From Octopus bimaculoides (lineage: Eukaryota): a stretch of 62,221 nucleotides of DNA. Location of the stretch: assembly GCF_001194135.2 (NCBI RefSeq), contig NC_069003.1:29628045-29690265 (forward strand). The letters run 5' to 3'. This document shows positions 18,236 to 61,818 of this stretch, piece after piece; within the stretch, counting starts at the first letter, position 1, and each line of letters opens with the position of its first letter. The notes under the pieces are model-generated. The model was not told the DNA's origin. It saw only the letters and a program-made list of their open reading frames with translations, and made no database searches. The position numbers and the translations under genes are program-made.

Positions 18236-18445
18236 TGTGTCTGTGTTTGTCCTCCTAGCATTGCTTGACAACCGATGCTGGTGTGTTTATGTCCCCGTCA
18301 CTTAGCGGTTCGGCAAAAAGTGACCGATAGAATAAGTACTAGGCTTACAAAGAATATGTCCTGGGGTCGATTTGCTCGACTAAAGGCGGTGCTCCAGCAT
18401 GGCCACAGTCAAAAGAGTGAAACAAGTAAAAGAGAGAAAGAGAAA
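17985..18445 (+). mobile_element. SINE family A, full length (tRNA-like head, internal (TA)/(GT)n, ...CAGCATGGCCACAGTC tail)
   Basis: A-box-like TGGCTGTGTGGTAA and B-box-like GGTTCGTTCCC; high identity to 46802-47223. Confidence 0.85.
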
Positions 18446-25539: not shown

Positions 25540-25744
25540 TTCAATCATTTCACCGCGGCCATACTGGGGCAAGGCCTTAAAGGATTTTAGTCGAACAATT
25601 CGACCCCAGGTCTGTCTTTAAAGCCTAGTACTTATTATATCAATTCTTTTGCCGAACCGCTAGTGTAACAGGGACGTAAACACACCAACACCGGTTGTCC
25701 AGTAGTGGTGGATGACAAACATAGACACAAAGACACATATGCAT

Positions 25745-25783
<39 letters not shown>

Positions 25784-25955
25784 AATATATACGATAGGCT
25801 TCTTTCGGTTTCCGTCTACCAAATCCACTCACAAGGCTTTAGTTTGCCCGACGCTATAATAGAAGACACTTGCCTAAGGTGCCACACAGTGGGGCTGAAC
25901 CTGGAATCATGTGGTTGGGAAGCAAGCTTCTTACCACACAGCCACGCCTGCGCCA
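25540..25955 (-). mobile_element. SINE family A, diverged
   Basis: Reverse complement of the family A head, internal microsatellite and tail. Confidence 0.75.
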
Positions 25956-33460: not shown

Positions 33461-33562
33461 ATGGCTAAGTCAAATATAGTGGTTCCTGTGAAATACGAAT
33501 TGAATTTCAACTGGGATTTGAACACCAATTCCTTTGAAGGGAAGGCAGACATAGAAATCAAG
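33461..33562 (+). CDS. Coding exon 1: MAKSNIVVPVKYELNFNWDLNTNSFEGKADIEIK
   Basis: PSA N-terminal (VxPxxYxL...FEGK) match; donor AAG|GTAAAT, phase 0. Upstream acceptor at 33260 suggests a 5'UTR segment. Confidence 0.85.
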
Positions 33563-33720
33563 GTAAATAAAACTACTGTTTTGTTACTCTTTGTAAGCCT
33601 AGTACTTATTATATCGGTCTCTTTTTGCCGAACCGCTAAGTTACGAAGACGTAAACACACCAGCATCGGTTGTCAAGCGATTTTGGGAGGACAAACACAG
33701 ACACAGACACAGACACACAG

Positions 33721-33767
<47 letters not shown>

Positions 33768-36700
33768 NNNNNNNNNNNNNNNNNNNNNNNNNNNNNNNNN
33801 NNNNNNNNNNNNNNNNNNNNNNNNNNNNNNNNNNNNNNNNNNNNNNNNNNNNNNNNNNNNNNNNNNNNNNNNNNNNNNNNNNNNNNNNNNNNNNNNNNNN
33901 NNNNNNNNNNNNNNNNNNNNNNNNNNNNNNNNNATATATATGACGGGCTTCTTTCAGTTTCCGTCTACCAAATCCACTCACAAGGCTTTGGTCGGCCCGA
34001 GGCTATAGAAGAAGACACTTGCCCAAGGTGCCACGCAGTGGGACTGAACCCAGAACCATGTGCTTGGCAAGCAAGCTACTTACCACACAGCTACTCCTAC
34101 GCCTGTTGCGAATTTTTCTTTTTATTTCTAAAAGTATTCAACTCTTTTCCTGTCCAAAGCATTTTCACAAGTTCTTTTACCAAACGCCCATGTCTGTTTT
34201 CAGAATTTTAGTTAGATATTATTTCATGTTCTGGTTGATATAAAGCTTTTTTCTTTTCGAACGTCCAGAATTACTCTGGCAGCTGGAAAAAAAACATCTT
34301 GAGATTTCGTATCATATATGACGCATGGATAAGACTGCGAGCTGGCAGAATCGTTACCGCGCCGAGAAAAAAGTTTACCAGCATTTCTTCCGAGTTTGCG
34401 TTCTGAGTTCAAATACCACCAAGGTCGATAAAATAGTACCAGTTGAATACCAGGGTTGATGTAACCGACTTAACCTCTCCCCCGAAATTACTCGCTCTAT
34501 GTTAAAATTTGAAACCACTATATGTTGCGTGGACACCAGAGAAATACGTCCTGTTTAGCATATATGATCATATGTTCTTAGTTATCTAAAGCTTTCCTTT
34601 CATAAAGTTAATCTGGTTGTTGAAAACAATTGAGAATGTTTAACATTTATGATGTCTGGACGTCTAGGAAATATGTCTATTGTATTACATTTAATCAAAC
34701 GTTCTGAGTAAAATAAAGCCTTGCTTTTCCTAAATCCTAAATTACTCTATTGGTTGAAATAGAATAGGAATGTGTATTATATATATATCGTATATGATAC
34801 ATGAGTGGAGGCGCAATGGCCCAGTGGTTAGGGCAGCGGACTCGCGGTCATAGGATCGCGGTTTCGATTCCCAGACCGGGCGTTGTGAGTACTTATTGAG
34901 TGAAAACACCTAAAGCTCCACGAGGCTCCGGCAGGGGATGGTGGCGAACCCTGCTGTACTCTTCCACNNNNNNNNNNAAAACACCTAAAGCTCCACGAGG
35001 CTCCGGCAGGGGATGGTGGCGAACCCTGCTGTACTCTTCCACCACAACTTTCTCTCACTCTTACTACCTGTTTCTGTTGTGCCTGTAATTCAAAGGGTCA
35101 GCCTTGTCACAATGTGTCACGCTGAATATCTCCGAGAACTACGTTAAGGGTACACGTTTCTTTGGAGTGCTCGGCCACTTGCACGTTAATTTCACAAGCA
35201 GGTTGTTCCGTTGATCGGATCAAATGGAACCCTCGTCGTCGTAAGCGACGGAGTGCCAACAACAATATGGTACATGGATGCCAAGGAAACATGTCCTGTG
35301 TATAATATGTGGGACACAGGACAGGTAAAGGGTTAAGATTGTCATTCTTCTTGCTGTTGTCGTTTAGACTCCAGGTCAGCTCTTAGAAAATAAATTTATA
35401 TTTAAAGCAATCCCGATCTTGGTGGAATTTCAACCCCGAACGTAAAAAGTGAAGAACTGCCGCTAAGCGCTTTGTCCAACACGCTAACGATTTAATAGTC
35501 CTTGTATAATAAGAATGTGAAAACATTTCTTGTGTGCTTTTGATTGCTTAATTAGTGGTGACCCGTCAAAGGGGAAATTATGCAAGTTACGCTTTGCAGT
35601 TCGGTGGCAGCCTATGTTAAGACTTTGATAAATCAGTTCAATTGTTTCTACAAGCGTAGGTTTGACTGTATGATAAGTAGCTTGCTTCCCAACCAAGTGG
35701 TTTCGCGTTCGGTCCCATTGCGTAGCACCTTGGACAATAACGTCGAGCCAACCAAAGCCTTTGTAAGTGGATTTCGGAAACAGAAACTCAAAGAAGCCAA
35801 TCGTACATATGTATTTTGTGCTTGTCTTTGAGTCTGTGTTTGTCCCCCCATCACCGATTGACAAACGGTGCTGGTGTGTTTACGTATCCGAAACTTAACG
35901 GTTCGATTTATCTCTTCTACTCTTACTCTCTGTCAGGTTGAGCAGCCGACGCAGCTTATTGAACTGAAGGCAAAAGATCTGTTCTTCAAAGATGCTCACT
36001 TCACAGGCGTTGGTAAGTAAATCGTTGAATTAATCACTAACAAAAGCGTAGTATCACCCAAAGCAAACGCCGCTTGATTTTGTGTGTGAGTGTGTGAATT
36101 AGTGAGAAAGAAAGCTTTTTCACGGCTCCCGACACGGGTCTGGTGGACATTGGAATAAATTCCAATAACAAAGAATGCTGTTTATTCATATTTAAATGCT
36201 CCTAGCAAAATTGCTTTAAAAGAGAAGTGGAATTATGAACAGCGTGAGCCAATATNNNNNNNNNNNNNNNNNNNNNNNNNNNNNNNNNNNNNNNNNNNNN
36301 NNNNNNNNNNNNNNNNNNNNNNNNNNNNNNNNNNNNNNNNNNNNNNNNNNNNNNNNNNNNNNNNNNNNNNNNNNNNNNNNNNNNNNNNNNNNNNNNNNNN
36401 NNNNNNNNNNNNNNNNNNNNNNNNNNNNNNNNNNNNNNNNNNNNNNNNNNNNNNNNNNNNNNNNNNNNNNNNNNNNNNNNNNNNNNNNNNNNNNNNNNNN
36501 NNNNNNNNNNNNNNNNNNNNNNNNNNNNNNNNNNNNNNNNNNNNNNNNNNNNNNNNNNNNNNNNNNNNNNNNNNNNNNNNNNNNNNNNNNNNNNNNNNNN
36601 NNNNNNNTTTTTTTTTTTTTTTTGCACTTATATAAACAACATTATTGACTTTTTGGCGTAGATATGTTACAACAAAAAGCCGAAGTCATCATCAACGAAG

Positions 36701-38998
36701 GAACCGAAACCGCCTCGTTGAAATTCCCGTACGAACTCAATGTAAGTAACATATTTTCCCACTTCACTGTGCAGTCCATTTGGTCATATATACGTTAGCG
36801 TGCTGTCTATCTTCACCTTCAGATTTAATGAGCTTTCTGCAATCAGGGAAGGCACGATCTTTTTCCTGATTTCGTTTTCTTTTCTTGTTCCATATCTTGC
36901 ACCAACCGTCTTCACATTTTTTTTTTCCACGTGTTTACTTATTTTCTTATATTTTCTTATATTTTCTAAGGATCTAATGATAGTTATATATGTGTTTTTT
37001 CGTGTTTTGTTCGAATGGTGACCACTCCTGAAGAAGTGCCAAATGTCTAAATCCAATGGACCAGTCACTGGATAAGTTTGGCACAGAAATGTTAACATAG
37101 AGTGGTGAATAAATCGATATATCGAATTTGAAGTCTCTGTCTCTTTTGAATATGAAANNNNNNNNNNNNNNNNNNNNNNNNNNNNNNNNNNNNNNNNNNN
37201 NNNNNNNNNNNNNNNNNNNNNNNNNNNNNNNNNNNNNNNNNNNNNNNNNNNNNNNNNNNNNNNNNNNNNNNNNNNNNNNNNNNNNNNNNNNNNNNNNNNN
37301 NNNNNNNNNNNNNNNNNNNNNNNNNNNNNNNNNNNNNNNNNNNNNNNNNNNNNNNNNNNNNNNNNNNNNNNNNNNNNNNNNNNNNNNNNNNNNNNNNNNN
37401 NNNNNNNNNNNNNNNNNNNNNNNNNNNNNNNNNNNNNNNNNNNNNNNNNNNNNNNNNNNNNNNNNNNNNNNNNNNNNNNNNNNNNNNNNNNNNNNNNNNN
37501 NNNNNNNNNNNNNNNNNNNNNNNNNNNNNNNNNNNNNNNNNNNNNNNNNNNNNNNNNNNNNNNNNNNNNNNNNNNNNNNNNNNNNNNNNNNNNNNNNNNN
37601 NNNNNNNNNNNNNNNNNNNNNNNNNNNNNNNNNNNNNNNNNNNNNNNNNNNNNNNNNNNNNNNNNNNNNNNNNNNNNNNNNNNNNNNNNNNNNNNNNNNN
37701 NNNNNNNNNNNNNNNNNNNNNNNNNNNNNNNNNNNNNNNNNNNNNNNNNNNNNNNNNNNNNNNNNNNNNNNNNNNNNNNNNNNNNNNNNNNNNNNNNNNN
37801 NNNNNNNNNNNNNNNNNNNNNNNNNNNNNNNNNNNNNNNNNNNNNNNNNNNNNNNNNNNNNNNNNNNNNNNNNNNNNNNNNNNNNNNNNNNNNNNNNNNN
37901 NNNNNNNNNNNNNNNNNNNNNNNNNNNNNNNNNNNNNNNNNNNNNNNNNNNNNNNNNNNNNNNNNNNNNNNNNNNNNNNNNNNNNNNNNNNNNNNNNNNN
38001 NNNNNNNNNNNNNNNNNNNNNNNNNNNNNNNNNNNNNNNNNNNNNNNNNNNNNNNNNNNNNNNNNNNNNNNNNNNNNNNNNNNNNNNNNNNNNNNNNNNN
38101 NNNNTATACATGAACACACATACATATACATGTATACTTTAAACTCTGTGTGTAAGAAAGAGAGAGTGAAAGGGATTAGTTTCAGCTTTTATATTCGATA
38201 TTAAAAATTTATTGCTAATACAATCGATGGGAACAAAATTAAGTTGAAGAATTTTGAGAAAACAAGTCAAGATTACAATCGATTTTAAATTTGCTTAAAA
38301 CGTAAATATTTTATTCTAGCTTTTGTGGCAAAATAATTACCATTGATTTTTCTGTATATATAAATGTGTGTGTGTGTATATGTGTGTGTGTGTGCGTGCG
38401 TTTGTGTGATTTGTGTACCTACCATCAGCAGTCAATAACAATTTATTTCAGTTAAATCTAGTTAATTCGCTGAACAATTTATTACGTTTTCGCTCACCTT
38501 TCCCACCTTTACCAAAACACCGATTCCATGATGAAGAAATCAATGAATCGTATCGACTTTTTTCTTTTTTAGGTTGGCGATGGTCAGTTGAGGCTGGCAT
38601 ACGGTGGACGAGTAAATTATTTCAATGGCGGAATATTCTTTGGTAGATTTGAGAACGACAGCAGTCACAGTAAAGTAATTGCAGCTGATCTGAAGGTGAA
38701 TTTTATTTTCTCTCTCTTACCATTATTTTTTGGCCTGTAATTGTTTGTATTCTATTTTATTTTTATCTATTCTTTTTTTATTTTTCTTTCATTTTATAAT
38801 TTTATATGTCCGGTCATTATTTTTATCTTTCTATTTCATTTGTCAATCTCAATATATTTAAAGTTAATTTAATTGCGAAAAATTCATTTTGACACTAAAT
38901 AGAATCTATTTTGTATATATTTAAATTTAGAATCAATTGGAAATTACACCTACACACACACAATTTACATACATATATATATATACTTACATATACTC

Positions 38999-39037
<39 letters not shown>

Positions 39038-40322
39038 TATATACCTGAAATTTCATATACATACAATTATGTATATATATATATGTACATACATACAATT
39101 ATATTTGTATATATATACATATGTATGTATGTATTTACTAACTGATAAGAGAAATAGAAAGTTCTGTCTACTTGTTTCGTTTTTGCTGTGTTTTTTATAT
39201 ATTTAGAGTCTCTGTCTGAGCTGTACCATTATCGGTCATAATATTAACAAACAAAAAGACAGTGTTTTAACAAGATTGTTAGTGCATCGAACGAAATTCT
39301 CTACGATATATAGCTAAGGTCCCCTACATTCTAATTTCAAATCCTGCTGTGAAAGATTTGGCATTTATTACCTAGCAGTCAAAGTAGCAGCAACACGTTT
39401 GAAAGGGCCTACCAGTCAAAATAGCAGCCATGTTGATTATGAGGAAGTCAAGGACAAAGAGTGTTCAACTATAATCTGGATAGTCAGAGGTTCAAGTCCT
39501 GTTCTGTTCTCTTCTTGCGTTCGTTCATTGAAACATGTAACCTCACTTGAGACAATTAACCTATTTCAATTAAGATCTTTGTAATGTTATGACTGTTAGT
39601 GGAGGCGCAATGGCCCATCGTTAGGACAGCGGACTCGCGGCCCAGTGGTTAGGGCAGCGGACTCGCGGTCATTTATATTTATTTTATATTTATTTACATT
39701 TTTCAAATATCTATCTTCAGAATGAAGGCTACTACCAAGTTTTTCCAACGTTGAGATCAGTCGGCCCAGTCTACTGCAACGTAACTATGAATGCACCAAG
39801 TGGTTATACCGCTCTGTCTAACATGGTATGTTCTCTCAACTTAACTGTCGTTAGAATTTCTTTTATAAAAATAAACTCAGATATTTTAGTAACATATACG
39901 TCATTGCTTTTGCTTTTGGACTACTTTATTGCCAGTTCTTTCCTGATCTAACAGAACTTTCTCCACGTCTTTTTCTTTTTGAAAGCGTTGTTCTAAGCGG
40001 CCCACTTTATCTAAAATGTATGGCTTCTTTGAGAGCGGCGGGATGTGGTTTGAGTGAGTTTTGAACGTTTCATTTTCAAACCTCACAGGCGATCAAGTTA
40101 CCTCAGAGCTGCAGAATGTCTGAATTGCATGCATGTCTTTCATAAAAAATAAGAAAAGATTTTCAAACTGATAGGTGATTGGTTTAGAAGTACGCTTCGC
40201 AGCCACGAGGTGGCTGTTTCGATTCCGACCGATGAATGCCATCTTGGACGTATATCTTGTATTATAAACCATCTATCAATTCAAACCGCGTAAGCAGAAA
40301 GAGGCAGGCAAAAATAGTGACA

Positions 40323-40365
<43 letters not shown>

Positions 40366-40512
40366 AAGCGTGGCTGGTGATAAGAACTTTGCTTCCCAAC
40401 CACAGGGTTCAGGCCCTCTGCATGGCATCTTGGGAAAATGTCTTGAACTATAGCCTCGAGCCTACCAAAGACTTATGAATGGATGATAAACTGAAACTGA
40501 AAGAAGCTAGTC

Positions 40513-40566
<54 letters not shown>

Positions 40567-41836
40567 ATAATTGATGAACGAAATGGAAGATGGATTTAGT
40601 AAGAATCTTTATTCTGCACGACGAGCGTTTCGACCCATCCTGCAGCTGTCCCTTAAGGGTAGGATATTGTGCACCAAGTTGTGTTGCATAAATCGGTGCA
40701 AGCTGTGTCACTTCAGGGTCTCGGTGTAAAAAAAAGTACCTTATTAGATATATTGAGTTCTCCTTGGCATGTTGTTCTCGCTCGTTGTATGTAGGTACAC
40801 TATGCATATGTGTGTGTGTATTTGCTCACCATCGCTTGACACCTTGTGCTAGTGTGTTTAGATCTCCATAATATAGCAGATCGGTGAAAGAGACCGATAG
40901 AATAAGTACCGGTGTTAAAAAGTATGTAGTGGGGTCGATTCGTTCGACTAAAAGTTCTTCAAGGCGATGCTCCAGCATGGCCGCGGTCAAACAACTGAAA
41001 CGAGTGAAGCATTAAAGACATACACAAGATTTACGCAAATCAGAGTTTAAAATACGGACAGTCAGAATTTTGGGCTTAAATCCGAGAAATGGACCATTAA
41101 ATGTGTTTATAAGGAGAAAAATATTGGAAAACATCAGAGCGACGAACAAACGATGAAGGTATTAGATGGTCGTGGATGTTCTAAAAATGACAGCCAAACA
41201 GCCCTTAAATCGCACCAAAATGTTTTTTGTCTTTTTATCATAATCGTATGAATTCCCGTGTAGAAAAAAAATTTGCCAAAATTTTCTGAAAATTCAAAAA
41301 AACAAAAAAGTTGGTGGGAAATAGATATAGGGGGTGCTTAAACCAGATTTCTGCCCCTATTTTTTATAGTATATTTTATATTACAGTCTCGAGTGTCTGA
41401 TGATGGAGATGTCAGTTTTAAAACAGCCATATTTTCAAAGCCTGAAGAATTGCGTATGGTTCTTGGACCTTTCAAAACCCTAAAAGAAGAGGGATGCAAT
41501 GATGTTAAACCCTTAATCAAAATCCACTCGTGTTCAGAAAATATCCATTTGGGTGATTGCGCACTGAAGGTGAGTGTTTTCTCAACGACGCATAAATTTC
41601 TTTTAAATACAAGATACACGATAAAAACTCTAAACTGGCAGAAATGGTGTTGCGTCGAACAAAATTCTCTAGCATTAGGCGAACGTAGATTGAAAATATT
41701 TGTGGAAAGCCGCTCAAGTGTTTTGTATTATTTTTTCCGATTATTTGAATTCGGAGTTCAAATCTAGCTATGATCAATATAACCATTCATTGTTCTAAAA
41801 TCGATAGAATTAGACATCAACCAAGTACTGAACTGC

Positions 41837-41886
<50 letters not shown>

Positions 41887-41938
41887 NNNNNNNNNNNNNN
41901 NNNNNNNNNNNNNNNNNNNNNNNNNNNNNNNNNNNNNN

Positions 41939-41981
<43 letters not shown>

Positions 41982-50069: not shown

Positions 50070-50115
<46 letters not shown>

Positions 50116-53100: not shown

Positions 53101-53325
53101 ACTATTTTTGTCAATTAGGAATTCGTGGACCAACTCGAAACTGGTGAGTGGTGTCCGCCATTCAATTTATTTGTTCATCCAGATTGCGAGGAAAGTTTTG
53201 AATCTTGGACAAACCAATCTTCGTTTCCTCTAGTCAAGGTAATTCTTTTATTCTTTTACATGTTTCAGTAATTTGACTGTGGCCATACTGGAGCACCACC
53301 TTTAAGTTGAATATATTAAATCATA

Positions 53326-53368
<43 letters not shown>

Positions 53369-55326
53369 ATGCATCAGTGTGCATATGTATGTTTAAGTGA
53401 AAGGGCCACTTAAATTATTTGTACCTGGCGAAAATGATTTGTACCTGGCGAGAATGATTTGTACCTGTAGTTTACAGGACCAGCCTTGTCACGTTCTGTG
53501 TCACGCTGGATTTTGTCTGAGAACTACGTTAACGGTATGCCAGTCTGGTGAGTATTCAGCCACTTGCACGTTAATTTCACGAGCAGGTTGTTCCGTTGGC
53601 TGGATCGACTCGATCACTCACCGTCGTAACCGACGGAGTCCCAGTTTTCACATGGCTTAATATAAAACCGTCTACGTGGTCGCTCAGCTTGCTAGAAAAA
53701 GCAACTGTATCACTGCTGTCTTTAAAAATGCCACACTAGGTAATGTTCTTACGGAGGCACACTTTGCCTTAAAGATTTGACTTCACGGCTGAAATATCTT
53801 TGATCAGAGGTCATCTGGTTCAGCTGCTTGACCTAAGGTTAAACAAAAACACCATTACCAACAAGAACGACAGCAATTCATAAAGAATTATTATGATTGT
53901 TTTAACATGAGATCATAACATATATATTAGGTTGGTGCATTATTATTGCGGCTTTTTTTCAATAAATTTTATTCAACAAAGAATTTATAATCAGGATAGA
54001 GTAACCGCAAATGTGTATGTATGTATATTTAAATCCCTCAACTCATGAGCAGAAGTAAAAAAAAAAAACGCAAAATCACAGCTAACTCTAGAAAGTCTTT
54101 TCATTTTTCGACAGGTTGAGCGGGAATTTGTCGATGGTGATATGAACCTGATTATAAAACAGGAACCATACTTAGGAAACGGTATGTTATATACTTGGTT
54201 GGCTTCAATGCAAACACAGCGTAAATTTCCATATGTGTGTGTTTATTCTCATACATACATATAGATAGATAAATGGATATATATATATATATATATATAN
54301 NNNNNNNNNNNNNNNNNNNNNNNNNNNNNNNNNNNNNNNNNNNNNNNNNNNNNNNNNNNNNNNNNNNNNNNNNNNNNNNNNNNNNNNNNNNNNNNNNNNN
54401 NNNNNNNNNNNNNNNNNNNNNNNNNNNNNNNNNNNNNNNNNNNNNNNNNNNNNNNNNNNNNNNNNNNNNNNNNNNNNNNNNNNNNNNNNNNNNNNNNNNN
54501 NNNNNNNNNNNNNNNNNNNNNNNNNNNNNNNNNNNNNNNNNNNNNNNNNNNNNNNNNNNNNNNNNNNNNNNNNNNNNNNNNNNNNNNNNNNNNNNNNNNN
54601 NNNNNNNNNNNNNNNNNNNNNNNNNNNNNNNNNNNNNNNNNNNNNNNNNNNNNNNNNNNNNNNNNNNNNNNNNNNNNNNNNNNNNNNNNNNNNNNNNNNN
54701 NNNNNNNNNNNNNNNNNNNNNNNNNNNNNNNNNNNNNNNNNNNNNNNNNNNNNNNNNNNNNNNNNNNNNNNNNNNNNNNNNNNNNNNNNNNNNNNNNNNN
54801 NNNNNNNNNNNNNNNNNNNNNNNNNNNNNNNNNNNNNNNNNNNNNNNNNNNNNNNNNNNNNNNNNNNNNNNNNNNNNNNNNNNNNNNNNNNNNNNNNNNN
54901 NNNNNNNNNNNNNNNNNNNNNNNNNNNNNNNNNNNNNNNNNNNNNNNNNNNNNNNNNNNNNNNNNNNNNNNNNNNNNNNNNNNNNNNNNNNNNNNNNNNN
55001 NNNNNNNNNNNNNNNNNNNNNNNNNNNNNNNNNNNNNNNNNNNNNNNNNNNNNNNNNNNNNNNNTATATATATCTTCGAAACGCCGGTGTTTTAATGGTG
55101 GCAGCTGATGAAGGAAATGTTTCTATGTGGCCTGCTTGTTTGTTGTACCTTGTTTATCATTTTGTCCATGTTCTTTTGCCACGTCATGTACCCAGTTATG
55201 TATCTATATGTACATGTAGATGAAGGTATGTACATACATGTACATATATATGCATATACTCATATATTGTTTGTATCACGACAGAACGCACGCGTTACCT
55301 TTATACAGTAAGTTTTATATATATGT

Positions 55327-55373
<47 letters not shown>

Positions 55374-56560
55374 TGATACATATGATATGATAGATATATC
55401 AGAGAAAGAGAGGAAGAGAGAGGGGCTGGGGACGAGGGGAGATAAAGCAAAGCTAATTCAACGTGTGAATATGTCAAAATAATTTTTTTGTTTATTTATC
55501 TAAAATATCTGTTTTTCCAGAAGGTCAAACCTGGCGTTTTCCTATAAATATAAGTGTGGAATCTAAGCAAGAGGTTCTTCGGGAAACAGTATCATCGATA
55601 ACTTTCAAAACCAACATAGAAAATGTTGACGAAAAACAATGGATTTTTGTAAGTAAATATTTTCTTCTCTCTTTTATCTGTTTTTTAGGCGCAAGCGTGG
55701 CTGTGTGGTTAGAAGCTTGTTTTCCAGCCATACGGTTCTGGGTTCTGTCCCACCAGTGGGATACTTTAGACATGTGTCTTCTACTTTAGCCTCGAGTCAA
55801 CCAAAGCCTTGTGAGTGGATTTGGTAGGCGGAAACTGAAAGAAGTACATCGTGTATATATATATATATANNNNNNNNNNNNNNNNNNNNNNNNNNNNNNN
55901 NNNNNNNNNNNNNNNNNNNNNNNNNNNNNNNNNNNNNNNNNNNNNNNNNNNNNNNNNNNNNNNNNNNNNNNNNNNNNNNNNNNNNNNTGGATGGAGGGGG
56001 TAACGAAGAAAGGGAGAAGGTGGGGAGGAGTGAAGAAAGGGTGCATGTGTGAGAGGAGTGAGGAGGGGAGTCAGATGGGGAGGAGAGTTCGAGCCCATGG
56101 GGCGCGAAGAGAGAAGACTAATTTCCTGTTCACAGCGAAGGCAGGAGTCTGGACGTGCAAAGACAATTCAAACACAGATAGGTGTTGAAACAAATGACAA
56201 GTAGAGCAAAAATGGCGCGAGACCCCGGTGTCGTTGCCGAGTCTAATGTCTCGGAGGTGTCTCGCCTGCGCCTATAAACCACATATTTACTCTCAAATTA
56301 AGTACCTACGTTTTGATTTTAAACTTCGATATTTTGAAATATCAACAATAGTCTATTTCTTTTATAATTGTCATTCTTACTGATGTTCTTCACAGATAAA
56401 TTCAACTGGTTTCGGCTGCTTCCGTACACTTTACAGCACGAGCATGCTTGAGGCTTTACTACGTGGAGTTCGTGAGAAGACTTTACCAGCCCATAATAGA
56501 AGCGTCTTGCAAAACGACTTATTTTCCTTGGTTTGTACTGATATGTTAGATGTTATTATT

Positions 56561-56605
<45 letters not shown>

Positions 56606-58243
56606 TTTTCGTTATCATCTTCCAATTCTGTTTCCATTTCTTGTCGAATGTCTTCCTGACACCTAGGGCAGGCAGAGAAACGCACTGTATATATTAGAAA
56701 GCCATTTGAATAAATACACCAAATTGCCCATTTACAAAGTCATGTGATAGAAAAAAAAAGAGGAAGAAGGACAGCGAAATAAAAGTAAACACAGAAAATA
56801 AAGGGGAACAGGGAAAGAAAACTCACAGCGACAATGCTCTTCTCAGTACGTGCGACGTACCAGTTAAGATTTTTAAAGTATTTTTTGCACTTCCCGTACG
56901 GCTGGTAAGCCAGGGATCAGTCTTCAATAATTTTTAGTTCCTTTTTTGGTTTATTATTATTATTATTATTACCTTGGTCACTGAGGTTCTCTTGTTCTAG
57001 TACAAGCTAGTGCGACTAGCTACTAATGCTTTATCGGTAGCAGGAATGCTTCTGTAAGTAATATAACTAAAAAATGGCGTGACTGAATAGCGAACTTGGG
57101 CGCACAGCTATGCTTCCACCTTTCTGTCTTGGAAGGAACATAACTAGATTCCAGTTTTCAACAGATGCATCGTTTTATCTACCACAGAAGAATTAAATGT
57201 AAATGTTTCTATCATAGCGTGATTCAAAATCAAAACATAAAGAGCCGGAAATAAATCCAGAAGGCTTTTTTTTTTCTTTCTTGTTTTGTAACATTAAAGA
57301 TTCTGCCTAAATACAACTGAAAATATTCCCCGTAAGTTAGCATTGGATAAAGTAACCCAACTAAAATAATGTTAAAATAAACAATGTTAATGTTTTCAGT
57401 GTGTAAAAGATGGAAAATATACATATCAATATTTCGGGCATAAGCTCTTTATCAAGATACAGGTGAGTTAAAAATTGTTTTCTTAAATGTTTTAACTACT
57501 ATCTTTCGTTTATTTGCAGACGTTTGACTCTAAAATAAGTTTAATCGATCTCATGAGTGCATTGCCAGCTTTTATCGAAGAGGACGACCATCACGTTCTC
57601 TACGATTTGATCAATAACTATGAGAGTATGGGATATTTGTTACAAGCTAAGAATCTCTTCGAAGACTGGAAGCTATTTGCCAGTAGCCTCTTTCGAAAAT
57701 CCTTTCAAACAGTAGGATTTGAAAGACAAAATGGTGAAAGTAGGTATTGTTTTTGTCGTTGTTATTACTGTTTTTGCGGTGGTACGAGTGGTAACGGTGA
57801 AGACGGTGGTAATTTTATAGGTGTGTTTTGTAGTGGGGGTGAGGGGGTGGTAGTGGTGGTGAGGGTGGTGGTAGTGCTGGTGACTTACTTACTTACTTAC
57901 TGCCAGATCACATTCAATGCACTAGTTCTCGTCCGACCACCGAAGTTGAGCAACATTGAGCTTAGTGAGAACTTAGATGGCAAACTTAAGCACTGTAAGC
58001 ATTTCACACATTTAAGGAGGCGAGCTAGCACTACTGTTAGCATGCTGGGCGAGATGTTTAGCGGCATTTCGTCTGTCGTTACGTTCTGGGTTCCAATTCC
58101 GCTGAGGTCGACTTTGCCTTTCATGCGCGGAAGGAATGGAAAAACCTTCGACGCACTTCGACAGCAATGGGGTGAGAGAAAAAAAAATAGAGAACGAAAA
58201 AACGGAAAGAGAAAAAAAAAATGTGTATCGATTAATGATTTAT

Positions 58244-58285
<42 letters not shown>

Positions 58286-61200
58286 ACATATATGCTACAA
58301 GACCTCCCAAAACCGGACACCTATATCTAAGTGTTATGCAAGCCTAAAAAGATTATCTATGAAAAAAAAAACAAGCAATGTCATTGTAAGCAATCTCCAG
58401 AGACGGCTTTCAGTTTTTGTCTACCAAATCTACTCACAAGAGCTTGGCCGACTATCTTATGAGACACTTACTCATGATGCCACGCAGTGGGACTGAACCC
58501 GAAACCTTGTGCTTGGGGGCAAACTTCTTACCATAGACCCATATCTCTATATATTTTTGTCAACGAAATGCGCATTAAACGTTGAGGATATTTCTATTTC
58601 CAGCCTACGTAACTGATTATACGCATTGTTTTTAATTCCTGTACATCTCTAATTGAGACGAATTCTTTTTCTCAATGACATTTCAACTGTGTCAATACAT
58701 TCATTCTTTTTTAAGGTTCTTTTTTAACTTACTTCTTTTCTTGAAGTCGGTAGGATGTGATCTGAGAGAGATTTGGCTGCTAGTTTGAGTGAGTCGAAAC
58801 ACTACCGTAATGGTTCAACACTCGCTCGCACCTTTGTGCATATCTATGTTAAAATGTTAAAAGAACTCTCACATTCTATTTGGGTTTTCCGCCTTATTTC
58901 CAGAAACGATTACTACCTTGCTAAGGGACAAACTGCTGTGTATGTTAGGAAAATATGGCGAAGATAGTGTACTTAAGGAAGCCAGGATGCTCTTCAAGAG
59001 TTTTCTCAATTATAGGAACTTCATCGATCCAAATATTCGATATTCTGTAAGTATATTTAATTATTTCTTTCTACTTTTGGCACAAGATCACTTCAACACA
59101 ATTCTCTTATGTTCTAACAACCTTGTCCATCGGTTGCCATATGTAATGGCTACATAATGTTTAATTATGTATGTTTTGTTTATGCATAGTTTATAGCTTA
59201 ATTTTTAGTGAAAAAAAGATGTCACCATCTTTAAAGTTTTTTTTTAAAGCGCTTTATTATAAGTGTCATTTTCTATTTCAATAATAGGTCTACACCACGG
59301 TTCTTTGTCACGATGAGGAAGCATTTGGTATGTTAAAAGAGGTAAATGTGTTCGTTTAACGTTGTTTTCGTTTAATAGCATAATTATTTCGACTTAACAT
59401 CCTCTTAACAAAATTGTTTCAAAATTTGGCTGAAAAGGGAGAGTGTTTGACGATTATATCATACTCAGTACATAATTGATTCTGCATTTTATCAACTCTA
59501 AAAAGGAAGGGCAAAGTTGATCTGATCGTGGTGTGATTTGAACTCTGAGCATAAAGAGACGAACAAAATGCTCTTAAACAACTTGTCCGATACGTTAACC
59601 ATTCTGCCAGTTCTCCTTCTTTTATATTTTACGTGTGTGTAATATATATGTAATATATATATATATATANNNNNNNNNNNNNNNNNNNNNNNNNNNNNNN
59701 NNNNNNNNNNNNNNNNNNNNNNNNNNNNNNNNNNNNNNNNNNNNNNNNNNNNNNNNNNNNNNNNNNNNNNNNNNNNNNNNNNNNNNNNNNNNNNNNNNNN
59801 NNNNNNNNNNNNNNNNNNNNNNNNNNNNNNNNNNNNNNNNNNNNNNNNNNNNNNNNNNNNNNNNNNNNNNNNNNNNNNNNNNNNNNNNNNNNNNNNNNNN
59901 NNNNNNNNNNNNNNNNNNNNNNNNNNNNNNNNNNNNNNNNNNNNNNNNNNNNNNNNNNNNNNNNNNNNNNNNNNNNNNNNNNNNNNNNNNNNNNNNNNNN
60001 NNNNNNNNNNNNNNNNNNNNNNNNNNNNNNNNNNNNNNNNNNNNNNNNNNNNNNNNNNNNNNNNNNNNNNNNNNNNNNNNNNNNNNNNNNNNNNNNNNNN
60101 NNNNNNNNNNNNNNNNNNNNNNNNNNNNNNNNNNNNNNNNNNNNNNNNNNNNNNNNNNNNNNNNNNNNNNNNNNNNNNNNNNNNNNNNNNNNNNNNNNNN
60201 NNNNNNNNNNNNNNNNNNNNNNNNNNNNNNNNNNNNNNNNNNNNNNNNNNNNNNNNNNNNNNNNNNNNNNNNNNNNNNNNNNNNNNNNNNNNNNNNNNNN
60301 NNNNNNNNNNNNNNNNNNNNNNNNNNNNNNNNNNNNNNNNNNNNNNNNNNNNNNNNNNNNNNNNNNNNNNNNNNNNNNNNNNNNNNNNNNNNNNNNNNNN
60401 NNNNNNNNNNNNNNNNNNNNNNNNNNNNNNNNNNNNNNNNNNNNNNNNNNNNNNNNNNNNNNNNNNNNNNNNTATATATAACCCGATTTTTTATATGCAT
60501 TATTAGGTTTACGAAAATCTGTTGTGGGATGAGGAAAGAATGAGAATTGAACGTGCGTTTGGTTCTGCCAGGAAAGAGAAAAACCTGAAGAAAGTCTTAG
60601 AGCTTTCACTTTCGGTAAGTAAGGATGCTTTCCTATTTTATGCCACTATTTTTTTACAAATTCATGGAAAAGATCTATTTCCATTGTATTTCACAGGTGA
60701 GCCTCTTTTCACCTTATCTACTATATAATGCATATATCATACACACACACACACACACACACACATACACACACACGGGGATTGCATGCATATGCAATAT
60801 AATATATTATTGAAGTTGGCAGAATCGTTAGCATACAGGGCGAAATACTTAGTGGTATTTCGCCTACCGCTACGTTCTGAGTTCAAATGCCACCGAGGTC
60901 GACTTTGCCTTTCATCCTTTCGGGGGTTGATAAATTAAGTACCAGTGAAACACTGGGGTCGATGTAATCGATTTAACCCCTCCTCCCAAAATATCAAGGC
61001 CTTGTGCCTTCAGTAGAAAGGATTATTATTATTATTATTGAGTGAGAAAGCACTGCATTCCATCAAAGTGACACTGGGGTAAAATATACGAAGCCCATTA
61101 TACCCATCATGACTACCCGTCTGATAAGGGTACACCAGGCACATGCATCACAACCATATGTGCGCGACAGTCAGAATAAATAGTGCATGACCTTGCAGGT

Positions 61201-61557
61201 GGGACTCAGTTAGAATTTTCTTCAGATCGAGTAGCCCATCCCGCTCAAAAGGTCCCTGAATAAGGGTTGTTTAAGGATGCTGAACAGGACCCATGTTTCC
61301 AGAGATGAATTATCCAAACCCTCAAAGAATTTCTCTCAGCACCTGGCTATGATGCTCCCCCACTACTTCTGCTCGTGATCAGAGATGCACATATCGTCAG
61401 CCACCAAGGGACATGCTCAACTGGTTAAGGTCAAACAACTGACAAGCAAATCTGTGGTATCGAGCAGAATATTTGCTGTAGCCCATCTTTTATACCAAAA
61501 CAAAACAATGTACATGGTAACACTTCCGATCAATTAAGATCAGAAGCCATGAGAGCC

Positions 61558-61615
<58 letters not shown>

Positions 61616-61818
61616 CTTTCAGAAACGCAGAAAAAGTAAATCTCTTTTCTCAATATCTTTCGCAGAATGAAGTTAAGAAACAAGCCATAGTGAATATGGT
61701 TGAAGGAATCACGCACACAGTGAAAGGGAGAGAACTTGCTTGGAAATTTTACAAAGAGAATTGGTCGGTTTACAACATTTATTATCGAAATTGTCCAATA
61801 GAAGCTAAACTTATTGAG
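33461..61818 (+). CDS. NPEPPS-like: Puromycin-sensitive aminopeptidase-like M1 family gene, catalytically degenerate paralog (23 exons traced, ~790 aa, incomplete at the 3' end)
   Basis: Hand-spliced exons with GT-AG sites align colinearly to PSA as recalled, e.g. KIDLVALPDY, YGLAFFRESSLL, SWTNQSSFPL, RSVLQNDLFSL, RIERAFG, AWKFYKENW. Most intron positions and phases match recalled human NPEPPS. One junction is unresolved. Confidence 0.9.
33590..34105 (-). mobile_element. SINE family A (intron 1)
   Basis: Reverse complement of family A, spanning a gap. Confidence 0.8.
34340..34520 (+). mobile_element. SINE family C
   Basis: GCGAGCTGGCAGAATCGTTA head; core partly deleted. Confidence 0.7.
34805..35265 (+). 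mobile_element. SINE family B (tRNA-Arg(TCG)-like head)
   Basis: GTGGAGGCGCAATGGCCCAGTGGTTAGGGCAGCGGACTCGCGGTC...GGTTTCGATTCCC with A and B boxes; tail GCGACGGAGTGCC(AAC)n. Confidence 0.85.
35937..36012 (+). CDS. Coding exon 2: VEQPTQLIELKAKDLFFKDAHFTGV
   Basis: TCTGTCAG| ... G|GTAAGT; phase 0->1. Confidence 0.85.
36662..36741 (+). CDS. Coding exon 3: DMLQQKAEVIINEGTETASLKFPYELN
   Basis: CGTAG| ... AAT|GTAAGT; phase 1->0; matches PSA 'EKVTLSFPSTL'. Confidence 0.8.
37021..37106 (+). ncRNA. Type I hammerhead ribozyme motif (Penelope pLTR-like), sense in intron 3
   Basis: ACCACUC-CUGAAGA-A-GUGCCAAA..UUUGGCAC-A-GAAA-UGUUAACAU-A-GAGUGGU. Perfect 7-bp stem I, 8-bp stem II, palindromic stem III; AATAAA at 37108. 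Confidence 0.65.
38573..38695 (+). CDS. Coding exon 4: VGDGQLRLAYGGRVNYFNGGIFFGRFENDSSHSKVIAADLK
   Basis: TTTTTAG| ... AAG|GTGAAT; phase 0->0; PSA 'TQFE' is replaced by 'ADLK'. Confidence 0.85.
39599..39672 (+). mobile_element. Family B SINE head only, internally duplicated
   Basis: GGCCCA..GTTAGG.CAGCGGACTCGCGG occurs twice in tandem. Confidence 0.75.
39721..39825 (+). CDS. Coding exon 5: NEGYYQVFPTLRSVGPVYCNVTMNAPSGYTALSNM
   Basis: TCTTCAG| ... ATG|GTATGT; ends in the M1 hallmark ALSNM. Confidence 0.9.
40360..41015 (+). mobile_element. SINE family A, diverged, with ~250 bp of non-family sequence inside its microsatellite
   Basis: Head at ~40365, (GT)/(GA)n, tail CGATGCTCCAGCATGGCCGCGG at ~40965. 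Confidence 0.6.
41387..41569 (+). CDS. Coding exon 6: SRVSDDGDVSFKTAIFSKPEELRMVLGPFKTLKEEGCNDVKPLIKIHSCSENIHLGDCALK
   Basis: TTACAG| ... AAG|GTGAGT; phase 0->0. Confidence 0.85.
43044..43143 (+). CDS. Coding exon 7: LAVDFRNKMQKYFAEKIPNLEKIDLVALPDYCK
   Basis: TTATAG| ... AAAG|GTTTGA; matches PSA 'YKDYFNVPYPLPKIDLIAIADF'; phase 0->1. Confidence 0.9.
44694..44860 (+). mobile_element. Mariner-like relic (left TIR fused to transposase C-terminus)
   Basis: TA+CGAGGGAGCGCTGAAAAGTT TIR-like start; later GLEKVKNHCIKCVNLRGEYVE resembles the mariner C-terminus GI.KL..RW.KC....G.YVE. Confidence 0.55.
45619..46252. repeat. 95-bp perfect inverted repeat (45619-45713 / 46158-46252)
   Basis: Arms checked base by base as reverse complements; a related diverged copy lies at ~47305-47460. 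Confidence 0.9.
46470..46690 (+). mobile_element. SINE family C
   Basis: GGCGAGCTGACAGAATCGTTAGC head and AGTAGAAAG(G/A)ATTATT tail. Confidence 0.7.
46802..47223 (+). mobile_element. SINE family A, full length
   Basis: High identity to 17985-18445. Confidence 0.9.
47741..48092. repeat. 73-nt direct repeat (47741-47813, 48020-48092; 2 mismatches)
   Basis: AGGAT(T/C)CAGTTAGCT(G/C)AAGACATCATCAGGAGGAACCACGTCCGGTTTCGGCCCCTACTCCTCTACCGTTTTG. Confidence 0.9.
48116..48828 (-). mobile_element. 3'UTR of the (TACA)n RLE element, split at its internal microsatellite by a ~460-bp insertion (48265-48722)
   Basis: 48116-48264 matches 29580-29686 and 48723-48828 matches 29447-29525 (reverse complement). 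Confidence 0.65.
48838..48983 (+). CDS. Coding exon 8 (active-site exon): EYSSQYGLAFFRESSLLVSEDSTLENQLKVLQSVSSVMCQQLIFAMYPE
   Basis: ATTTCAG| ... GAG|GTAAGT; phase 1->0. Aligns to GAMENWGLVTYRETALL...VALVVGHELAHQWFGNLVTM. Confidence 0.9.
49400..49742 (-). mobile_element. SINE family D, near full length
   Basis: tRNA head GGCGCATGGCTCAGTGGTTAGAGCG...GAGTTCGAATCCC plus CORE-like domain. The 3' part is inverted relative to 49095-49225. Confidence 0.8.
49889..50035 (+). CDS. Coding exon 9: KKAWLIDGIRKFFSYLVLDVLRPGFECLKQFYAEVTSKALTFNSLSSKE
   Basis: TTTTACAG| ... GAG|GTGAGC; WLIDG aligns to WLNEG. Confidence 0.9.
50650..50980 (+). mobile_element. SINE family B
   Basis: Matches 34855-35260. Confidence 0.85.
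51085..51530 (-). mobile_element. Dimeric SINE family C
   Basis: Two head-to-tail units; the upstream unit has a different tail (...GCCCCTTGTGGGCAATAAAGAAATAAG). Confidence 0.75.
51606..51688 (+). CDS. Coding exon 10: AALNKQDDIIQNKTASLIAMLYNSHIC
   Basis: TTCACAG| ... CAG|GTAAGT; QDDIIQNKTASLIAML aligns to FDAISYSKGASVIRML; ends in phase 2. Confidence 0.85.
51747..51795 (+). other. Intronic hairpin, 18-bp perfect stem
   Basis: GATGGCGTATGTTCCTAC-GGCTGGAAAAGCT-GTAGGAACATACGCCATC. Confidence 0.85.
51911..52125. mobile_element. hAT MITE with perfect 8-bp TSD
   Basis: GTTTAAAC|CAGGGG ... CCCCTG|GTTTAAAC. Confidence 0.8.
52746..52793 (+). CDS. Probable coding exon 11: NRVAGVDNESECNVLE
   Basis: Long T tract + ATTAG| ... 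GAG|GTAAGT; only one open frame; phase conflicts with exon 10. Confidence 0.5.
52890..52904 (+). CDS. Probable 15-nt micro-exon 12: IRNNT
   Basis: TTATCACAG| ATCCGGAATAACACG |GTATGT; position corresponds to PSA 'QKNAAT'. Confidence 0.5.
53119..53143 (+). CDS. Probable coding exon 13: EFVDQLET
   Basis: CAATTAG| ... CTG|GTGAGT; parallels PSA 'DLWESLE'. Confidence 0.6.
53183..53238 (+). CDS. Coding exon 14: DCEESFESWTNQSSFPLVK
   Basis: CATCCAG| ... AAG|GTAATT; SWTNQSSFPL aligns to TWTKQMGFPL. Confidence 0.85.
53475..53640 (+). mobile_element. SINE family B, 3' part
   Basis: CAGCCTTGTCAC...CACTTGCACGTTAATTTCACGAGCAGG...CGACGGAGT. Confidence 0.75.
54115..54181 (+). CDS. Coding exon 15: VEREFVDGDMNLIIKQEPYLGN
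   Basis: TCGACAG| ... ACG|GTATGT; phase 0->1. Confidence 0.85.
55521..55648 (+). CDS. Coding exon 16: EGQTWRFPINISVESKQEVLRETVSSITFKTNIENVDEKQWIF
   Basis: TTTCCAG| ... TTT|GTAAGT; matches W.VPI.I...NVKPDQWVK. Confidence 0.9.
56396..56530 (+). CDS. Coding exon 17: INSTGFGCFRTLYSTSMLEALLRGVREKTLPAHNRSVLQNDLFSL
   Basis: CTTCACAG| ... TTG|GTTTGT; strongest PSA similarity (GFYRTQYSSAMLESLL...LQNDLFSL). Confidence 0.92.
57400..57462 (+). CDS. Probable extra 63-nt exon 18: CVKDGKYTYQYFGHKLFIKIQ (no PSA counterpart)
   Basis: GTTTTCAG| ... CAG|GTGAGT; phase 0->0, open frame. Confidence 0.55.
57520..57739 (+). CDS. Coding exon 19: TFDSKISLIDLMSALPAFIEEDDHHVLYDLINNYESMGYLLQAKNLFEDWKLFASSLFRKSFQTVGFERQNGE
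   Basis: TTTGCAG| ... GAAA|GTAGGT; 220 nt, phase 0->1. Confidence 0.9.
57895..58003 (+). pseudogene. Degenerate 5S rRNA-derived sequence (5S pseudogene or SINE3-like head)
   Basis: GCACTAGTTCTCGTCCGACCACCGAAGTTGAGCAAC...ACTTAGATGG versus 5S GCACCGGTTCTCGTCCGATCACCGAAGTTAAGCAAC...ACTTGGATGG (recalled); deletion after box C. Confidence 0.75.
58017..58128 (+). mobile_element. SINE family C, 3'-truncated
   Basis: GAGGCGAGCTAGC...GAGGTCGACTTTGCCTTTCAT. Confidence 0.7.
58904..59046 (+). CDS. Coding exon 20: KTITTLLRDKLLCMLGKYGEDSVLKEARMLFKSFLNYRNFIDPNIRYS
   Basis: TTTCCAG| ... TCT|GTAAGT; matches LLRGLVLGKLGKAG...EEARRRF. Confidence 0.92.
59288..59341 (+). CDS. Coding exon 21: VYTTVLCHDEEAFGMLKE
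   Basis: AATAG| ... GAG|GTAAAT; matches VYLTVLKHGD...MLK. Confidence 0.88.
60507..60614 (+). CDS. Coding exon 22: VYENLLWDEERMRIERAFGSARKEKNLKKVLELSLS
   Basis: TATTAG| ... TCG|GTAAGT; matches EEKNRIERVLG...KVLTFALS. Confidence 0.92.
60812..61022 (+). mobile_element. SINE family C, near full length
   Basis: Head TTGGCAGAATCGTTAGC, core GAGGTCGACTTTGCCTTTCATCCTTTCGGGG (resembles the Nin domain, from recall), tail AGTAGAAAGGATTATT. Confidence 0.8.
61040..61557 (-). mobile_element. ~520-bp non-coding interspersed element flanked by (TAT)n on both sides
   Basis: GC-richer unique-looking block between (TAT)n at 61022-61039 and 61558-61613. Confidence 0.5.
61666..61818 (+). CDS. Coding exon 23: NEVKKQAIVNMVEGITHTVKGRELAWKFYKENWSVYNIYYRNCPIEAKLIE
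   Basis: TTCGCAG| ... GAG|GTAATT; matches EEVRPQD...GRKAAWKFIKDNW. Confidence 0.92.

What the first reader, a model, noticed from the sequence alone, without database searches (positions are those of the whole stretch)
33461..61818. Puromycin-sensitive aminopeptidase paralog that has lost its entire catalytic apparatus (candidate pseudo-peptidase)
Seen: splicing exon 43044-43143 to 48838-48983, 49889-50035 and 51606-51688 gives ...PDYCK-EYSSQ-YGLAFFRESSLL...VLQSV-SSVMCQ-QLIFAMYPE-KKA-WLIDG...QDDII-Q-NKTASLIAML. Established: M1 peptidases need GAMEN (exopeptidase motif), HExxH-x18-E (Zn ligands and general base) and a transition-state Tyr (SYSKG). Here GAMEN->EYSSQ, HELAH->SVMCQ, NEG->IDG, Tyr->Gln, and TQFE->ADLK. 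Flanking structural residues, open reading frames and splice sites are retained over 23 exons, and the C-terminal ERAP1-like domain is the best conserved part. Inference: a lineage-specific, intron-retaining duplicate kept as a non-catalytic scaffold or peptide-binding protein, comparable to the M1-fold non-enzyme TAF2.
Basis: partly seen in the sequence, partly recalled or inferred. Interest (0 to 1): 0.85.

Follow-up and report, generated by a model that had tools for sequence, protein, structure and literature searches.

The report
Catalytically dead octopus PSA paralog
This is a real, intact octopus gene copied from the puromycin-sensitive aminopeptidase family that has lost every residue needed to cut peptides yet is still protected by natural selection, so it is a conserved "pseudo-enzyme" and not a dead gene.

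Summary
The window is Octopus bimaculoides chromosome CM046623.1. The region 33461-61818 carries 20 coding exons, 774 codons with no stops and canonical AG/GT at every junction. They translate exactly to residues 1-774 of the public model XP_014781587.1, "puromycin-sensitive aminopeptidase-like".

All catalytic elements of M1 peptidases are replaced: GAMEN->EYSSQ, HELAH->SVMCQ, NEG->IDG, Tyr->Gln and TQFE->ADLK. Every N gap lies in an intron. The gap-free orthologous loci of O. sinensis and O. vulgaris have the same exons and the same dead motifs, with no alternative intact exon.

Selection is clearly purifying. pN is 0.024 against pS 0.137, and dN/dS is 0.16-0.23 (Fisher P = 2e-20). No indel occurs in any exon. 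A decaying pseudogene is therefore rejected.

The closest solved relative is human PSA, collinear over the full length (E = 1.3e-73). The C-terminal ERAP1_C domain is the best conserved part, and the catalytic domain falls below Pfam's threshold.

There are 20 exons in the window and 22 in the complete orthologues, not 23.

The proposed function, non-catalytic binding or scaffolding, remains inference. This is a new member of a known kind, the M1 non-peptidase homologues such as MNP-1 and TAF2.

The parts
33461..33562 (+). Coding exon 1 (start ATG; M1 N-terminal domain begins)
   Evidence: identical to the start of XP_014781587.1
35937..36012 (+). Coding exon 2
36662..36741 (+). Coding exon 3
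38573..38695 (+). Coding exon 4; ends in ADLK where PSA has TQFE (the N-domain Glu that holds the substrate amino group is lost)
39721..39825 (+). Coding exon 5 (FPCWDEP -> FPTLRSVG)
41387..41569 (+). Coding exon 6
43044..43143 (+). Coding exon 7 (strand before the former GAMEN motif: KIDLVALPDYCK)
48838..48983 (+). Coding exon 8: GAMEN->EYSSQ and HELAH->SVMCQ (both Zn-ligand His residues and the general-base Glu lost)
49889..50035 (+). Coding exon 9: WLNEG->WLIDG (third Zn ligand Glu->Asp; spacing from the former HExxH is 3 residues shorter)
51606..51689 (+). Coding exon 10: SYSKG Tyr->Gln (IQNKTAS); donor CAG|GTAAGT at 51689
52746..52793 (+). Coding exon 11 (NRVAGVDNESECNVLE; replaces a PSA helix)
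53119..53238 (+). Coding exon 12
54115..54181 (+). Coding exon 13
55521..55648 (+). Coding exon 14 (beta-sandwich domain; tandem cagAAG acceptor 55521/55524 matches O. sinensis isoforms X1/X2)
56396..56530 (+). Coding exon 15 (start of ERAP1_C helical domain; LQNDLFSL identical to human PSA)
57520..57739 (+). Coding exon 16 (its first 73 codons, 57520-57738, were the query that recovered the orthologues)
58904..59046 (+). Coding exon 17
59288..59341 (+). Coding exon 18 (VYTTVLCHDEEAFGMLKE)
60507..60614 (+). Coding exon 19
61666..61818 (+). Coding exon 20. The gene continues beyond the window: exons 21-22 (59 aa in O. sinensis) are not found in the 9.6 kb assembled downstream, which contains several N gaps

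Best explanation
The region is the Octopus bimaculoides gene already modelled as XP_014781587.1, a multi-exon paralog of puromycin-sensitive aminopeptidase (PSA/NPEPPS, MEROPS family M1). Shown: it keeps the four-domain M1 layout, with no N-terminal extension ahead of the M1 N-domain. Every element of the M1 catalytic machinery has been replaced: both substrate-N-terminus anchors (TQFE Glu, GAMEN Glu), both His zinc ligands, the general-base Glu (now Val), the third zinc-ligand Glu (now Asp) and the transition-state Tyr (now Gln). Shown: the same dead motifs, exon lengths and splice sites are kept in O. sinensis and O. vulgaris, and the coding sequence is under purifying selection in all domains, including the former catalytic domain. 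Inferred: the protein cannot work as a zinc aminopeptidase and acts as a non-catalytic binding protein. It would use the retained M1 cavity and C-terminal helical domain to hold peptides or protein partners. This parallels the engineered PSA Glu->Val mutant, which becomes an inactive binding protein, and the catalysis-independent partner-binding role of human PSA. Inferred: the extreme divergence of the N-terminal and catalytic domains, set against the slow present-day amino-acid change, implies an old duplication or an early burst of change followed by renewed constraint.
For: Gene model and frames. Identity with the public model and with the O. bimaculoides record. Motif replacements; the motifs are identical in the three species. 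No intact motif exon in the window or in the orthologous loci, where O. vulgaris has no N and O. sinensis has N only after the gene. Selection, O. bimaculoides vs O. sinensis: 109/2322 nt and 43/774 aa differ; pN 0.0236 vs pS 0.1365; Fisher P = 2e-20; omega 0.159 by NG86 (bootstrap 0.107-0.23) and 0.234 by ML; catalytic-domain segment 0.113. O. bimaculoides vs O. vulgaris gives 0.15/0.22. Alignable introns differ by 9.3%, close to pS. All 20 exons have equal lengths, whereas intron lengths differ. Family placement: PSA 251 bits and E = 1.3e-73, collinear over residues 7-831, against ERAP1 at 123 bits. Pfam gives ERAP1_C 185 bits, M1_N 41 bits, and Peptidase_M1 19.6 bits, below its 27.7 cut-off. 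Identity to human PSA is 24% (N domain), 25% (catalytic), 32% (sandwich) and 37% (C-terminal). Precedent for non-catalytic PSA function and for E->V giving a 'catalytically inactive binding protein': PMC12407707.
Against: No direct evidence of transcription or protein was obtainable here; RefSeq isoforms X1/X2 are only indirect. No activity, metal-binding or partner data exist. The 3D model is unreliable for residues 1-436 (pLDDT < 50), so retention of the catalytic-domain fold rests on collinear sequence homology alone. Ser/Cys/Gln/Asp at the former metal site could in principle bind a metal. Selection was measured on only one informative species split, because O. sinensis and O. vulgaris are nearly identical. 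The presence of a separate canonical PSA in octopus was not shown directly. The only hint is a peptide AFPCWDEPSFK in an O. vulgaris ink proteome.
Confidence: 0.8

Rival explanations
1. A decaying (unitary or duplicated) pseudogene whose exons merely look open.
For: All catalytic residues are gone. The catalytic domain scores below Pfam's threshold. An ancestral-looking peptide at exon 11 lies in another frame. The O. bimaculoides public model ends in an intron read-through.
Against: There are no stops in the 774 codons read from the window or in the 833 codons of each complete orthologue. All splice sites are kept and no exon carries an indel. pN/pS is 0.17 with P = 2e-20. The synonymous rate is close to the intron rate. 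The truncated O. bimaculoides C-terminus coincides with N gaps just downstream of the window.
Confidence: 0.03
2. A still-active peptidase: intact catalytic exons are hidden in assembly gaps or used alternatively, or a relocated or new active site does the chemistry.
For: The window has 12 N gaps in the gene, and one (43382-43680) is large enough to hold an exon. Cys, Ser and Asp now sit at the old metal site.
Against: Six-frame motif scans found no GxMEN/HExxHxW/WLNEG-type exon in the window, in the O. sinensis locus (no N inside the gene) or in the O. vulgaris locus (no N at all). tblastn with the human catalytic segment on the O. sinensis locus gave the same negative result. Five separate catalytic elements on four different exons are all replaced, so three or four alternative exons would be needed.
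Confidence: 0.04
3. A conserved protein whose selected function has nothing to do with binding peptides, for example a purely structural or regulatory subunit of a complex. The M1 cavity would be irrelevant and only surfaces such as the N-terminal or C-terminal domain would matter.
For: Human PSA regulates LRRC8A channels through its N-terminal domain, independently of catalysis (PMC12407707). TAF2 and MNP-1 are M1-fold proteins with non-proteolytic roles. dN is similar across all four domains (0.018-0.032).
Against: Nothing here discriminates this from peptide binding. The PSA residues E81 and E107 used for LRRC8A binding align to Gly and Arg in the octopus protein (my reading of the alignment). 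To my knowledge LRRC8 is chordate-specific, so that particular partner is unlikely.
Confidence: 0.13

Closest known systems
Puromycin-sensitive aminopeptidase (PSA/NPEPPS), e.g. human PDB 8sw0 / 9o5k
   Same: Collinear full-length homology (E = 1.3e-73). Same four-domain order. No N-terminal extension ahead of the M1 N-domain. The C-terminal domain is 37% identical, including LQNDLFSL. Best Foldseek match for the confidently modelled C-terminal half.
   Different: All catalytic motifs are replaced. The N-terminal and catalytic domains are only 24-25% identical. There is a 3-residue deletion between the former HExxH and the third ligand. A short unrelated exon 11 replaces a helix.
Engineered PSA E309V ('catalytically inactive binding protein', Thompson et al. 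2003) and catalysis-independent PSA as a VRAC auxiliary subunit (PMC12407707)
   Same: The octopus protein naturally carries Val at the general-base Glu position (HELAH->SVMCQ). This shows that a PSA scaffold can work without catalysis.
   Different: The engineered mutant keeps its zinc ligands, GAMEN and Tyr, whereas the octopus protein has lost them all. The LRRC8A-contact residues E81 and E107 are not conserved.
C. elegans MNP-1 (matrix non-peptidase homologue 1), an M1 pseudo-peptidase
   Same: [quoted passage not shown]
   Different: To my knowledge MNP-1 is a membrane/extracellular protein of the aminopeptidase-N type. The octopus protein is PSA-type and starts directly at the M1 N-domain with no N-terminal extension.
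TAF2 (TFIID subunit with M1 fold)
   Same: An M1-like architecture used without peptidase chemistry (from general knowledge; not tested here).
   Different: TAF2 is an ancient pan-eukaryotic orthologue group. The octopus protein is far closer to PSA than to any other solved M1 protein, so it is an independent loss of catalysis.

Membership tests
Active M1 zinc aminopeptidases (MEROPS M01, gluzincins) | GxMEN exopeptidase motif | tested here: not met
   EYSSQ aligns to GAMEN; same in the three species
Active M1 zinc aminopeptidases (MEROPS M01, gluzincins) | HExxH-x18-E zinc-binding and general-base motif | tested here: not met
   SVMCQ ... WLIDG, with spacing 3 residues shorter
Active M1 zinc aminopeptidases (MEROPS M01, gluzincins) | Transition-state Tyr (SYSKG) | tested here: not met
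   Gln in IQNKTAS
Active M1 zinc aminopeptidases (MEROPS M01, gluzincins) | Pfam Peptidase_M1 (PF01433) at or above the gathering score | tested here: not met
   19.6 and 17.1 bits against a cut-off of 27.7
Active M1 zinc aminopeptidases (MEROPS M01, gluzincins) | Aminopeptidase activity and bound zinc | not testable with these tools
   Needs recombinant protein
M1-fold homologues (four-domain architecture) | Peptidase_M1_N and ERAP1_C domains in order, collinear with a solved M1 enzyme | tested here: met
   PF17900 at 41-45 bits and PF11838 at 165-185 bits; PSA alignment over residues 7-831
M1-fold homologues (four-domain architecture) | Thermolysin-like fold of the middle domain retained in 3D | tested here: inconclusive
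   The AF2 model has pLDDT < 50 for residues 1-436 because only 6 sequences were available. The C-terminal half matches PSA.
PSA/NPEPPS subfamily (as a paralog) | Closer to PSA than to other M1 subfamilies | tested here: met
   251 bits to PSA against 123 bits to ERAP1. For the C-terminal part alone, E = 7e-32 against 2e-5.
PSA/NPEPPS subfamily (as a paralog) | Phylogeny with the canonical cephalopod PSA, to date the duplication | not tested
   No cephalopod canonical PSA could be retrieved with the available searches
Pseudogene | Disabling mutations, lost splice sites, dN/dS near 1 | tested here: not met
   No stops or frameshifts and AG/GT kept in the three species; omega 0.16-0.23, P = 2e-20
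Pseudoenzyme (non-peptidase homologue) | Enzyme homologue lacking catalytic residues and maintained by purifying selection | tested here: met
Pseudoenzyme (non-peptidase homologue) | Expressed as RNA and protein | not testable with these tools
   Only indirect: RefSeq and ENA gene models in three species, and two isoforms differing at a tandem acceptor

The most novel reading that the evidence does not exclude
An old PSA-derived pseudoenzyme, cephalopod-wide or wider. After losing catalysis its former catalytic domain was remodelled and is now under constraint for a new role. One candidate role is a peptide 'trap'. Another is a regulatory partner of canonical PSA or of another complex, in a lineage noted for nervous-system innovation.
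Probability: 0.15. Interest if true: 0.6.

Novelty: new member of a known kind. Interest (0 to 1): 0.4.

Why it matters
Public databases name this protein "puromycin-sensitive aminopeptidase". Any functional annotation, degradome count or proteomic interpretation in octopus that treats it as an enzyme would therefore be wrong. It is a clean natural example of a PSA scaffold kept by selection after complete loss of the M1 catalytic apparatus. This fits recent evidence that PSA has catalysis-independent binding roles, and the protein could serve as a natural probe for what the M1/PSA architecture does beyond proteolysis. The finding is modest in scope: pseudo-peptidases are common, and M1 examples are already known.

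Tried and rejected
- The word-indexed protein search failed or found nothing useful. Two calls timed out. Two found nothing. One returned only three distant metagenome M1 proteins (37). No cephalopod relatives were reachable that way.
I used the first 73 codons of exon 16 (window:57520-57738) instead. That recovered the Octopus cluster, but the query was too short to detect canonical PSAs or distant orthologues. Its other two hits (P0002, P0003) are repetitive, unrelated proteins.
- My first guess for exon 11 (52777-52849, 'MQRFGGKFLNSNFNYG...') was rejected. It is out of phase with the true exon-10 donor, and it changes non-conservatively between species. The real exon 11 is 52746-52793.
- A SINE-like repeat at about 52.5 kb that weakly aligned to PSA was discarded as a repeat.
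- Structure prediction was uninformative for the N-terminal and catalytic half.
- Rfam and tRNA scans of the window found nothing.
- Literature searches for the accessions found no paper. The one octopus + PSA paper concerns canonical-type peptides only.


Full report
**Observation**

That 158-aa piece matches Pfam Peptidase_M1 only weakly (22 bits, below the 27.7 cut-off). It also matches solved M1 enzymes (ERAP2, E = 4e-6). The residue-by-residue alignments put EYSSQ on GAMEN, SVMCQ on HELAH and WLIDG on WLNEG, with a 3-residue shortening in between.

As a reference I used human PSA. I wrote the sequence from memory and then checked it as 100% identical to PDB 8sw0_A residues 29-902. Global alignment to it adds Tyr->Gln (IQNKTAS against SYSKGAS) and TQFE->ADLK. 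So the motif claims are correct.

**Gene model**

I defined the exons using tblastn with human PSA, frame-aware lists of splice sites, and later the public protein. The window holds 20 coding exons from 33461 to 61818 (coordinates are in 'parts'). They total 2322 nt, or 774 codons, with no stop. Every acceptor is AG and every donor GT.

- Exon 10 ends at 51689 (CAG|GTAAGT), not 51688.
- There are 20 exons in the window and 22 in the complete gene, not 23.

All 12 N gaps inside the finding lie in introns. The two 10-N gaps are unmerged overlaps with 65 nt and 80 nt exact duplications on both sides.

**What the locus is**

A full HMMER scan of 1.84 billion representatives used the first 73 codons of exon 16 as query. 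It returned one specific hit at 99% identity. Its 90% cluster has four members:

| Accession | Species | Length | Public name |
|---|---|---|---|
| XP_036368355.1 / XP_036368356.1 | O. sinensis | 833 / 832 aa | puromycin-sensitive aminopeptidase-like, isoforms X1 / X2 |
| CAI9739623.1 | O. vulgaris | 833 aa | puromycin-sensitive aminopeptidase |
| XP_014781587.1 = A0A0L8GGI9 | O. bimaculoides | 781 aa | puromycin-sensitive aminopeptidase(-like) |

My 774-aa translation equals residues 1-774 of the O. bimaculoides protein. The window is base-for-base identical to GCA_001194135.2 CM046623.1 at that gene.

The last 7 residues of the O. bimaculoides model (VITTINN) are read-through of the exon-20 donor. 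N gaps of 1819 and 2487 lie just downstream of the window. Exons 21-22, which encode 59 aa in O. sinensis, cannot be found in the 9.6 kb assembled downstream.

**Is an intact catalytic exon hidden?**

No. Six-frame motif scans find no GxMEN, HExxHxW, WLNEG or SYxKG exon in three places:
- the readable window;
- the O. sinensis locus, whose only N run lies beyond the gene;
- the O. vulgaris locus, which has no N at all.

tblastn of the human catalytic segment against the O. sinensis locus agrees. The three species share the same dead motifs.

**Gene or pseudogene?**

All 20 exons have orthologues of identical length, with AG/GT kept, in O. sinensis. All 22 are kept in O. vulgaris. Intron lengths differ; for example intron 7 is 5.7 kb in the window and 17.5 kb in O. 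sinensis.

| Measure (O. bimaculoides vs O. sinensis) | Value |
|---|---|
| Nucleotide differences | 109 / 2322 |
| Amino-acid differences | 43 / 774 |
| pN vs pS | 0.0236 vs 0.1365 (Fisher P = 2e-20) |
| omega, NG86 | 0.159 (bootstrap 0.107-0.23) |
| omega, ML | 0.234 |
| omega, former catalytic domain | 0.113 |
| Mismatch in alignable introns | 9.3% |

Comparing O. bimaculoides with O. vulgaris gives omega of 0.15 (NG86) and 0.22 (ML). Intron mismatch is close to pS, as expected if synonymous sites are near neutral. This rejects a decaying pseudogene. It also shows constraint on the former catalytic domain, not only on the C-terminal domain.

**Family placement and pattern of divergence**

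The full-length protein aligns collinearly to human PSA over residues 7-831 (E = 1.3e-73, 251 bits). The next best match is ERAP1 at 123 bits. Identity to human PSA and Pfam scores by domain:

| Domain | Identity to human PSA | Pfam model and score |
|---|---|---|
| N-terminal | 24% | Peptidase_M1_N, 41 bits |
| Catalytic | 25% | Peptidase_M1, 19.6 bits (below cut-off) |
| Beta-sandwich | 32% | - |
| C-terminal helical | 37% | ERAP1_C, 185 bits |

To my knowledge the catalytic domain is the best conserved part of canonical PSAs, so this pattern is inverted. Amino-acid change across the O. bimaculoides–O. sinensis split is slow (5.6%). Taken together, this implies an old duplication or an early burst of change followed by renewed constraint. 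That is an inference.

AlphaFold2 with the only six admissible sequences is confident only for residues ~437-833. That half matches PSA best. It says nothing about the former active site.

**Mechanism**

Shown: the canonical chemistry is impossible, because there is no general base, no His ligands, no N-terminus anchors and no Tyr.

Inferred: the protein acts by binding. Two literature facts make this plausible. [quoted passage not shown] Human PSA also inhibits LRRC8A/SWELL1 channels independently of catalysis, as shown with the E309V mutant and with tosedostat (PMC12407707; PDB 9o5k). That particular partner is unlikely here. The contact residues E81 and E107 align to Gly and Arg (from the alignment), and to my knowledge LRRC8 is chordate-specific.

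**Comparison and novelty**

M1 non-peptidase homologues are a known kind. C. elegans MNP-1 lacks three of the four HExxH+E residues (PMC10368266). Non-peptidase homologues in general are discussed in PMC4242634. TAF2 is another M1-fold non-enzyme.

The octopus gene model is public, but it is named as an enzyme. I found no paper citing its accessions. I therefore rate it a new member of a known kind and of moderate interest.

**Limits**

- There is no direct expression evidence.
- No relatives outside the genus Octopus were reachable.
- Selection was measured on essentially one species split.
- A separate canonical octopus PSA was not shown directly. The only hint is the peptide AFPCWDEPSFK in an O. 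vulgaris ink proteome.

Noticed in passing
window 34968-34977 and 48524-48533: Both 10-N 'gaps' are flanked by exact duplications: 65 nt and 80 nt left of the gap recur immediately to its right. They are unmerged contig overlaps, not missing sequence. Both lie in introns (1 and 7).
   Followed up: yes
window 55518-55526 (acceptor of exon 14): Tandem cagAAG acceptor (55521 / 55524). The same site explains O. sinensis isoforms X1 and X2, which differ by one Glu (LGNEGQTW against LGNGQTW). It hints at real transcript evidence behind the RefSeq models.
   Followed up: partly
window 52778-52849 (overlaps exon 11 and intron 11, other frame): A peptide MQRFGGKFLNSNFNYGCKKKIIIE faintly resembles the PSA helix DFKKGMNMYLTKFQQKNA that the real exon 11 replaces. 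It is open in all three species but changes YG->PR and I->T, so it is not constrained. It may be a relic of the ancestral exon frame, or chance.
   Followed up: partly
window 16424-17203 (+): A 260-aa stop-free stretch (…FTKYCCFLCLWDSRATNKHCVQFEWP…KLGLMKQFVKTL…) with no Pfam hit. It looks like a transposon-derived ORF of a type common in invertebrate genomes. Not identified.
   Followed up: partly
window 6052-6247, 17987-18430, 25621-25951, 33595-34100, 35656-35810, 46804-47201, 55697-55858, 60864-60981: An interspersed SINE-like repeat family (4-8 self-matches each), with several copies inside introns 1, 7, 14 and 19 of the gene. No tRNA or Rfam match. In translation it produced a spurious weak similarity to PSA.
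   Followed up: partly
window 62221 onward (L003 38762-48382): The O. bimaculoides assembly just downstream of the window has several N gaps, the largest 1819 and 2487 N. Exons 21-22 are not found there, so the public 781-aa protein is truncated and ends in intron read-through (VITTINN).
   Followed up: yes
window 1-33460: No other M1/PSA-like exon upstream (tblastn with human PSA). No neighbouring gene was called within 10 kb of the O. vulgaris or O. bimaculoides gene. The paralog is therefore not in a tight tandem array with a canonical PSA.
   Followed up: partly
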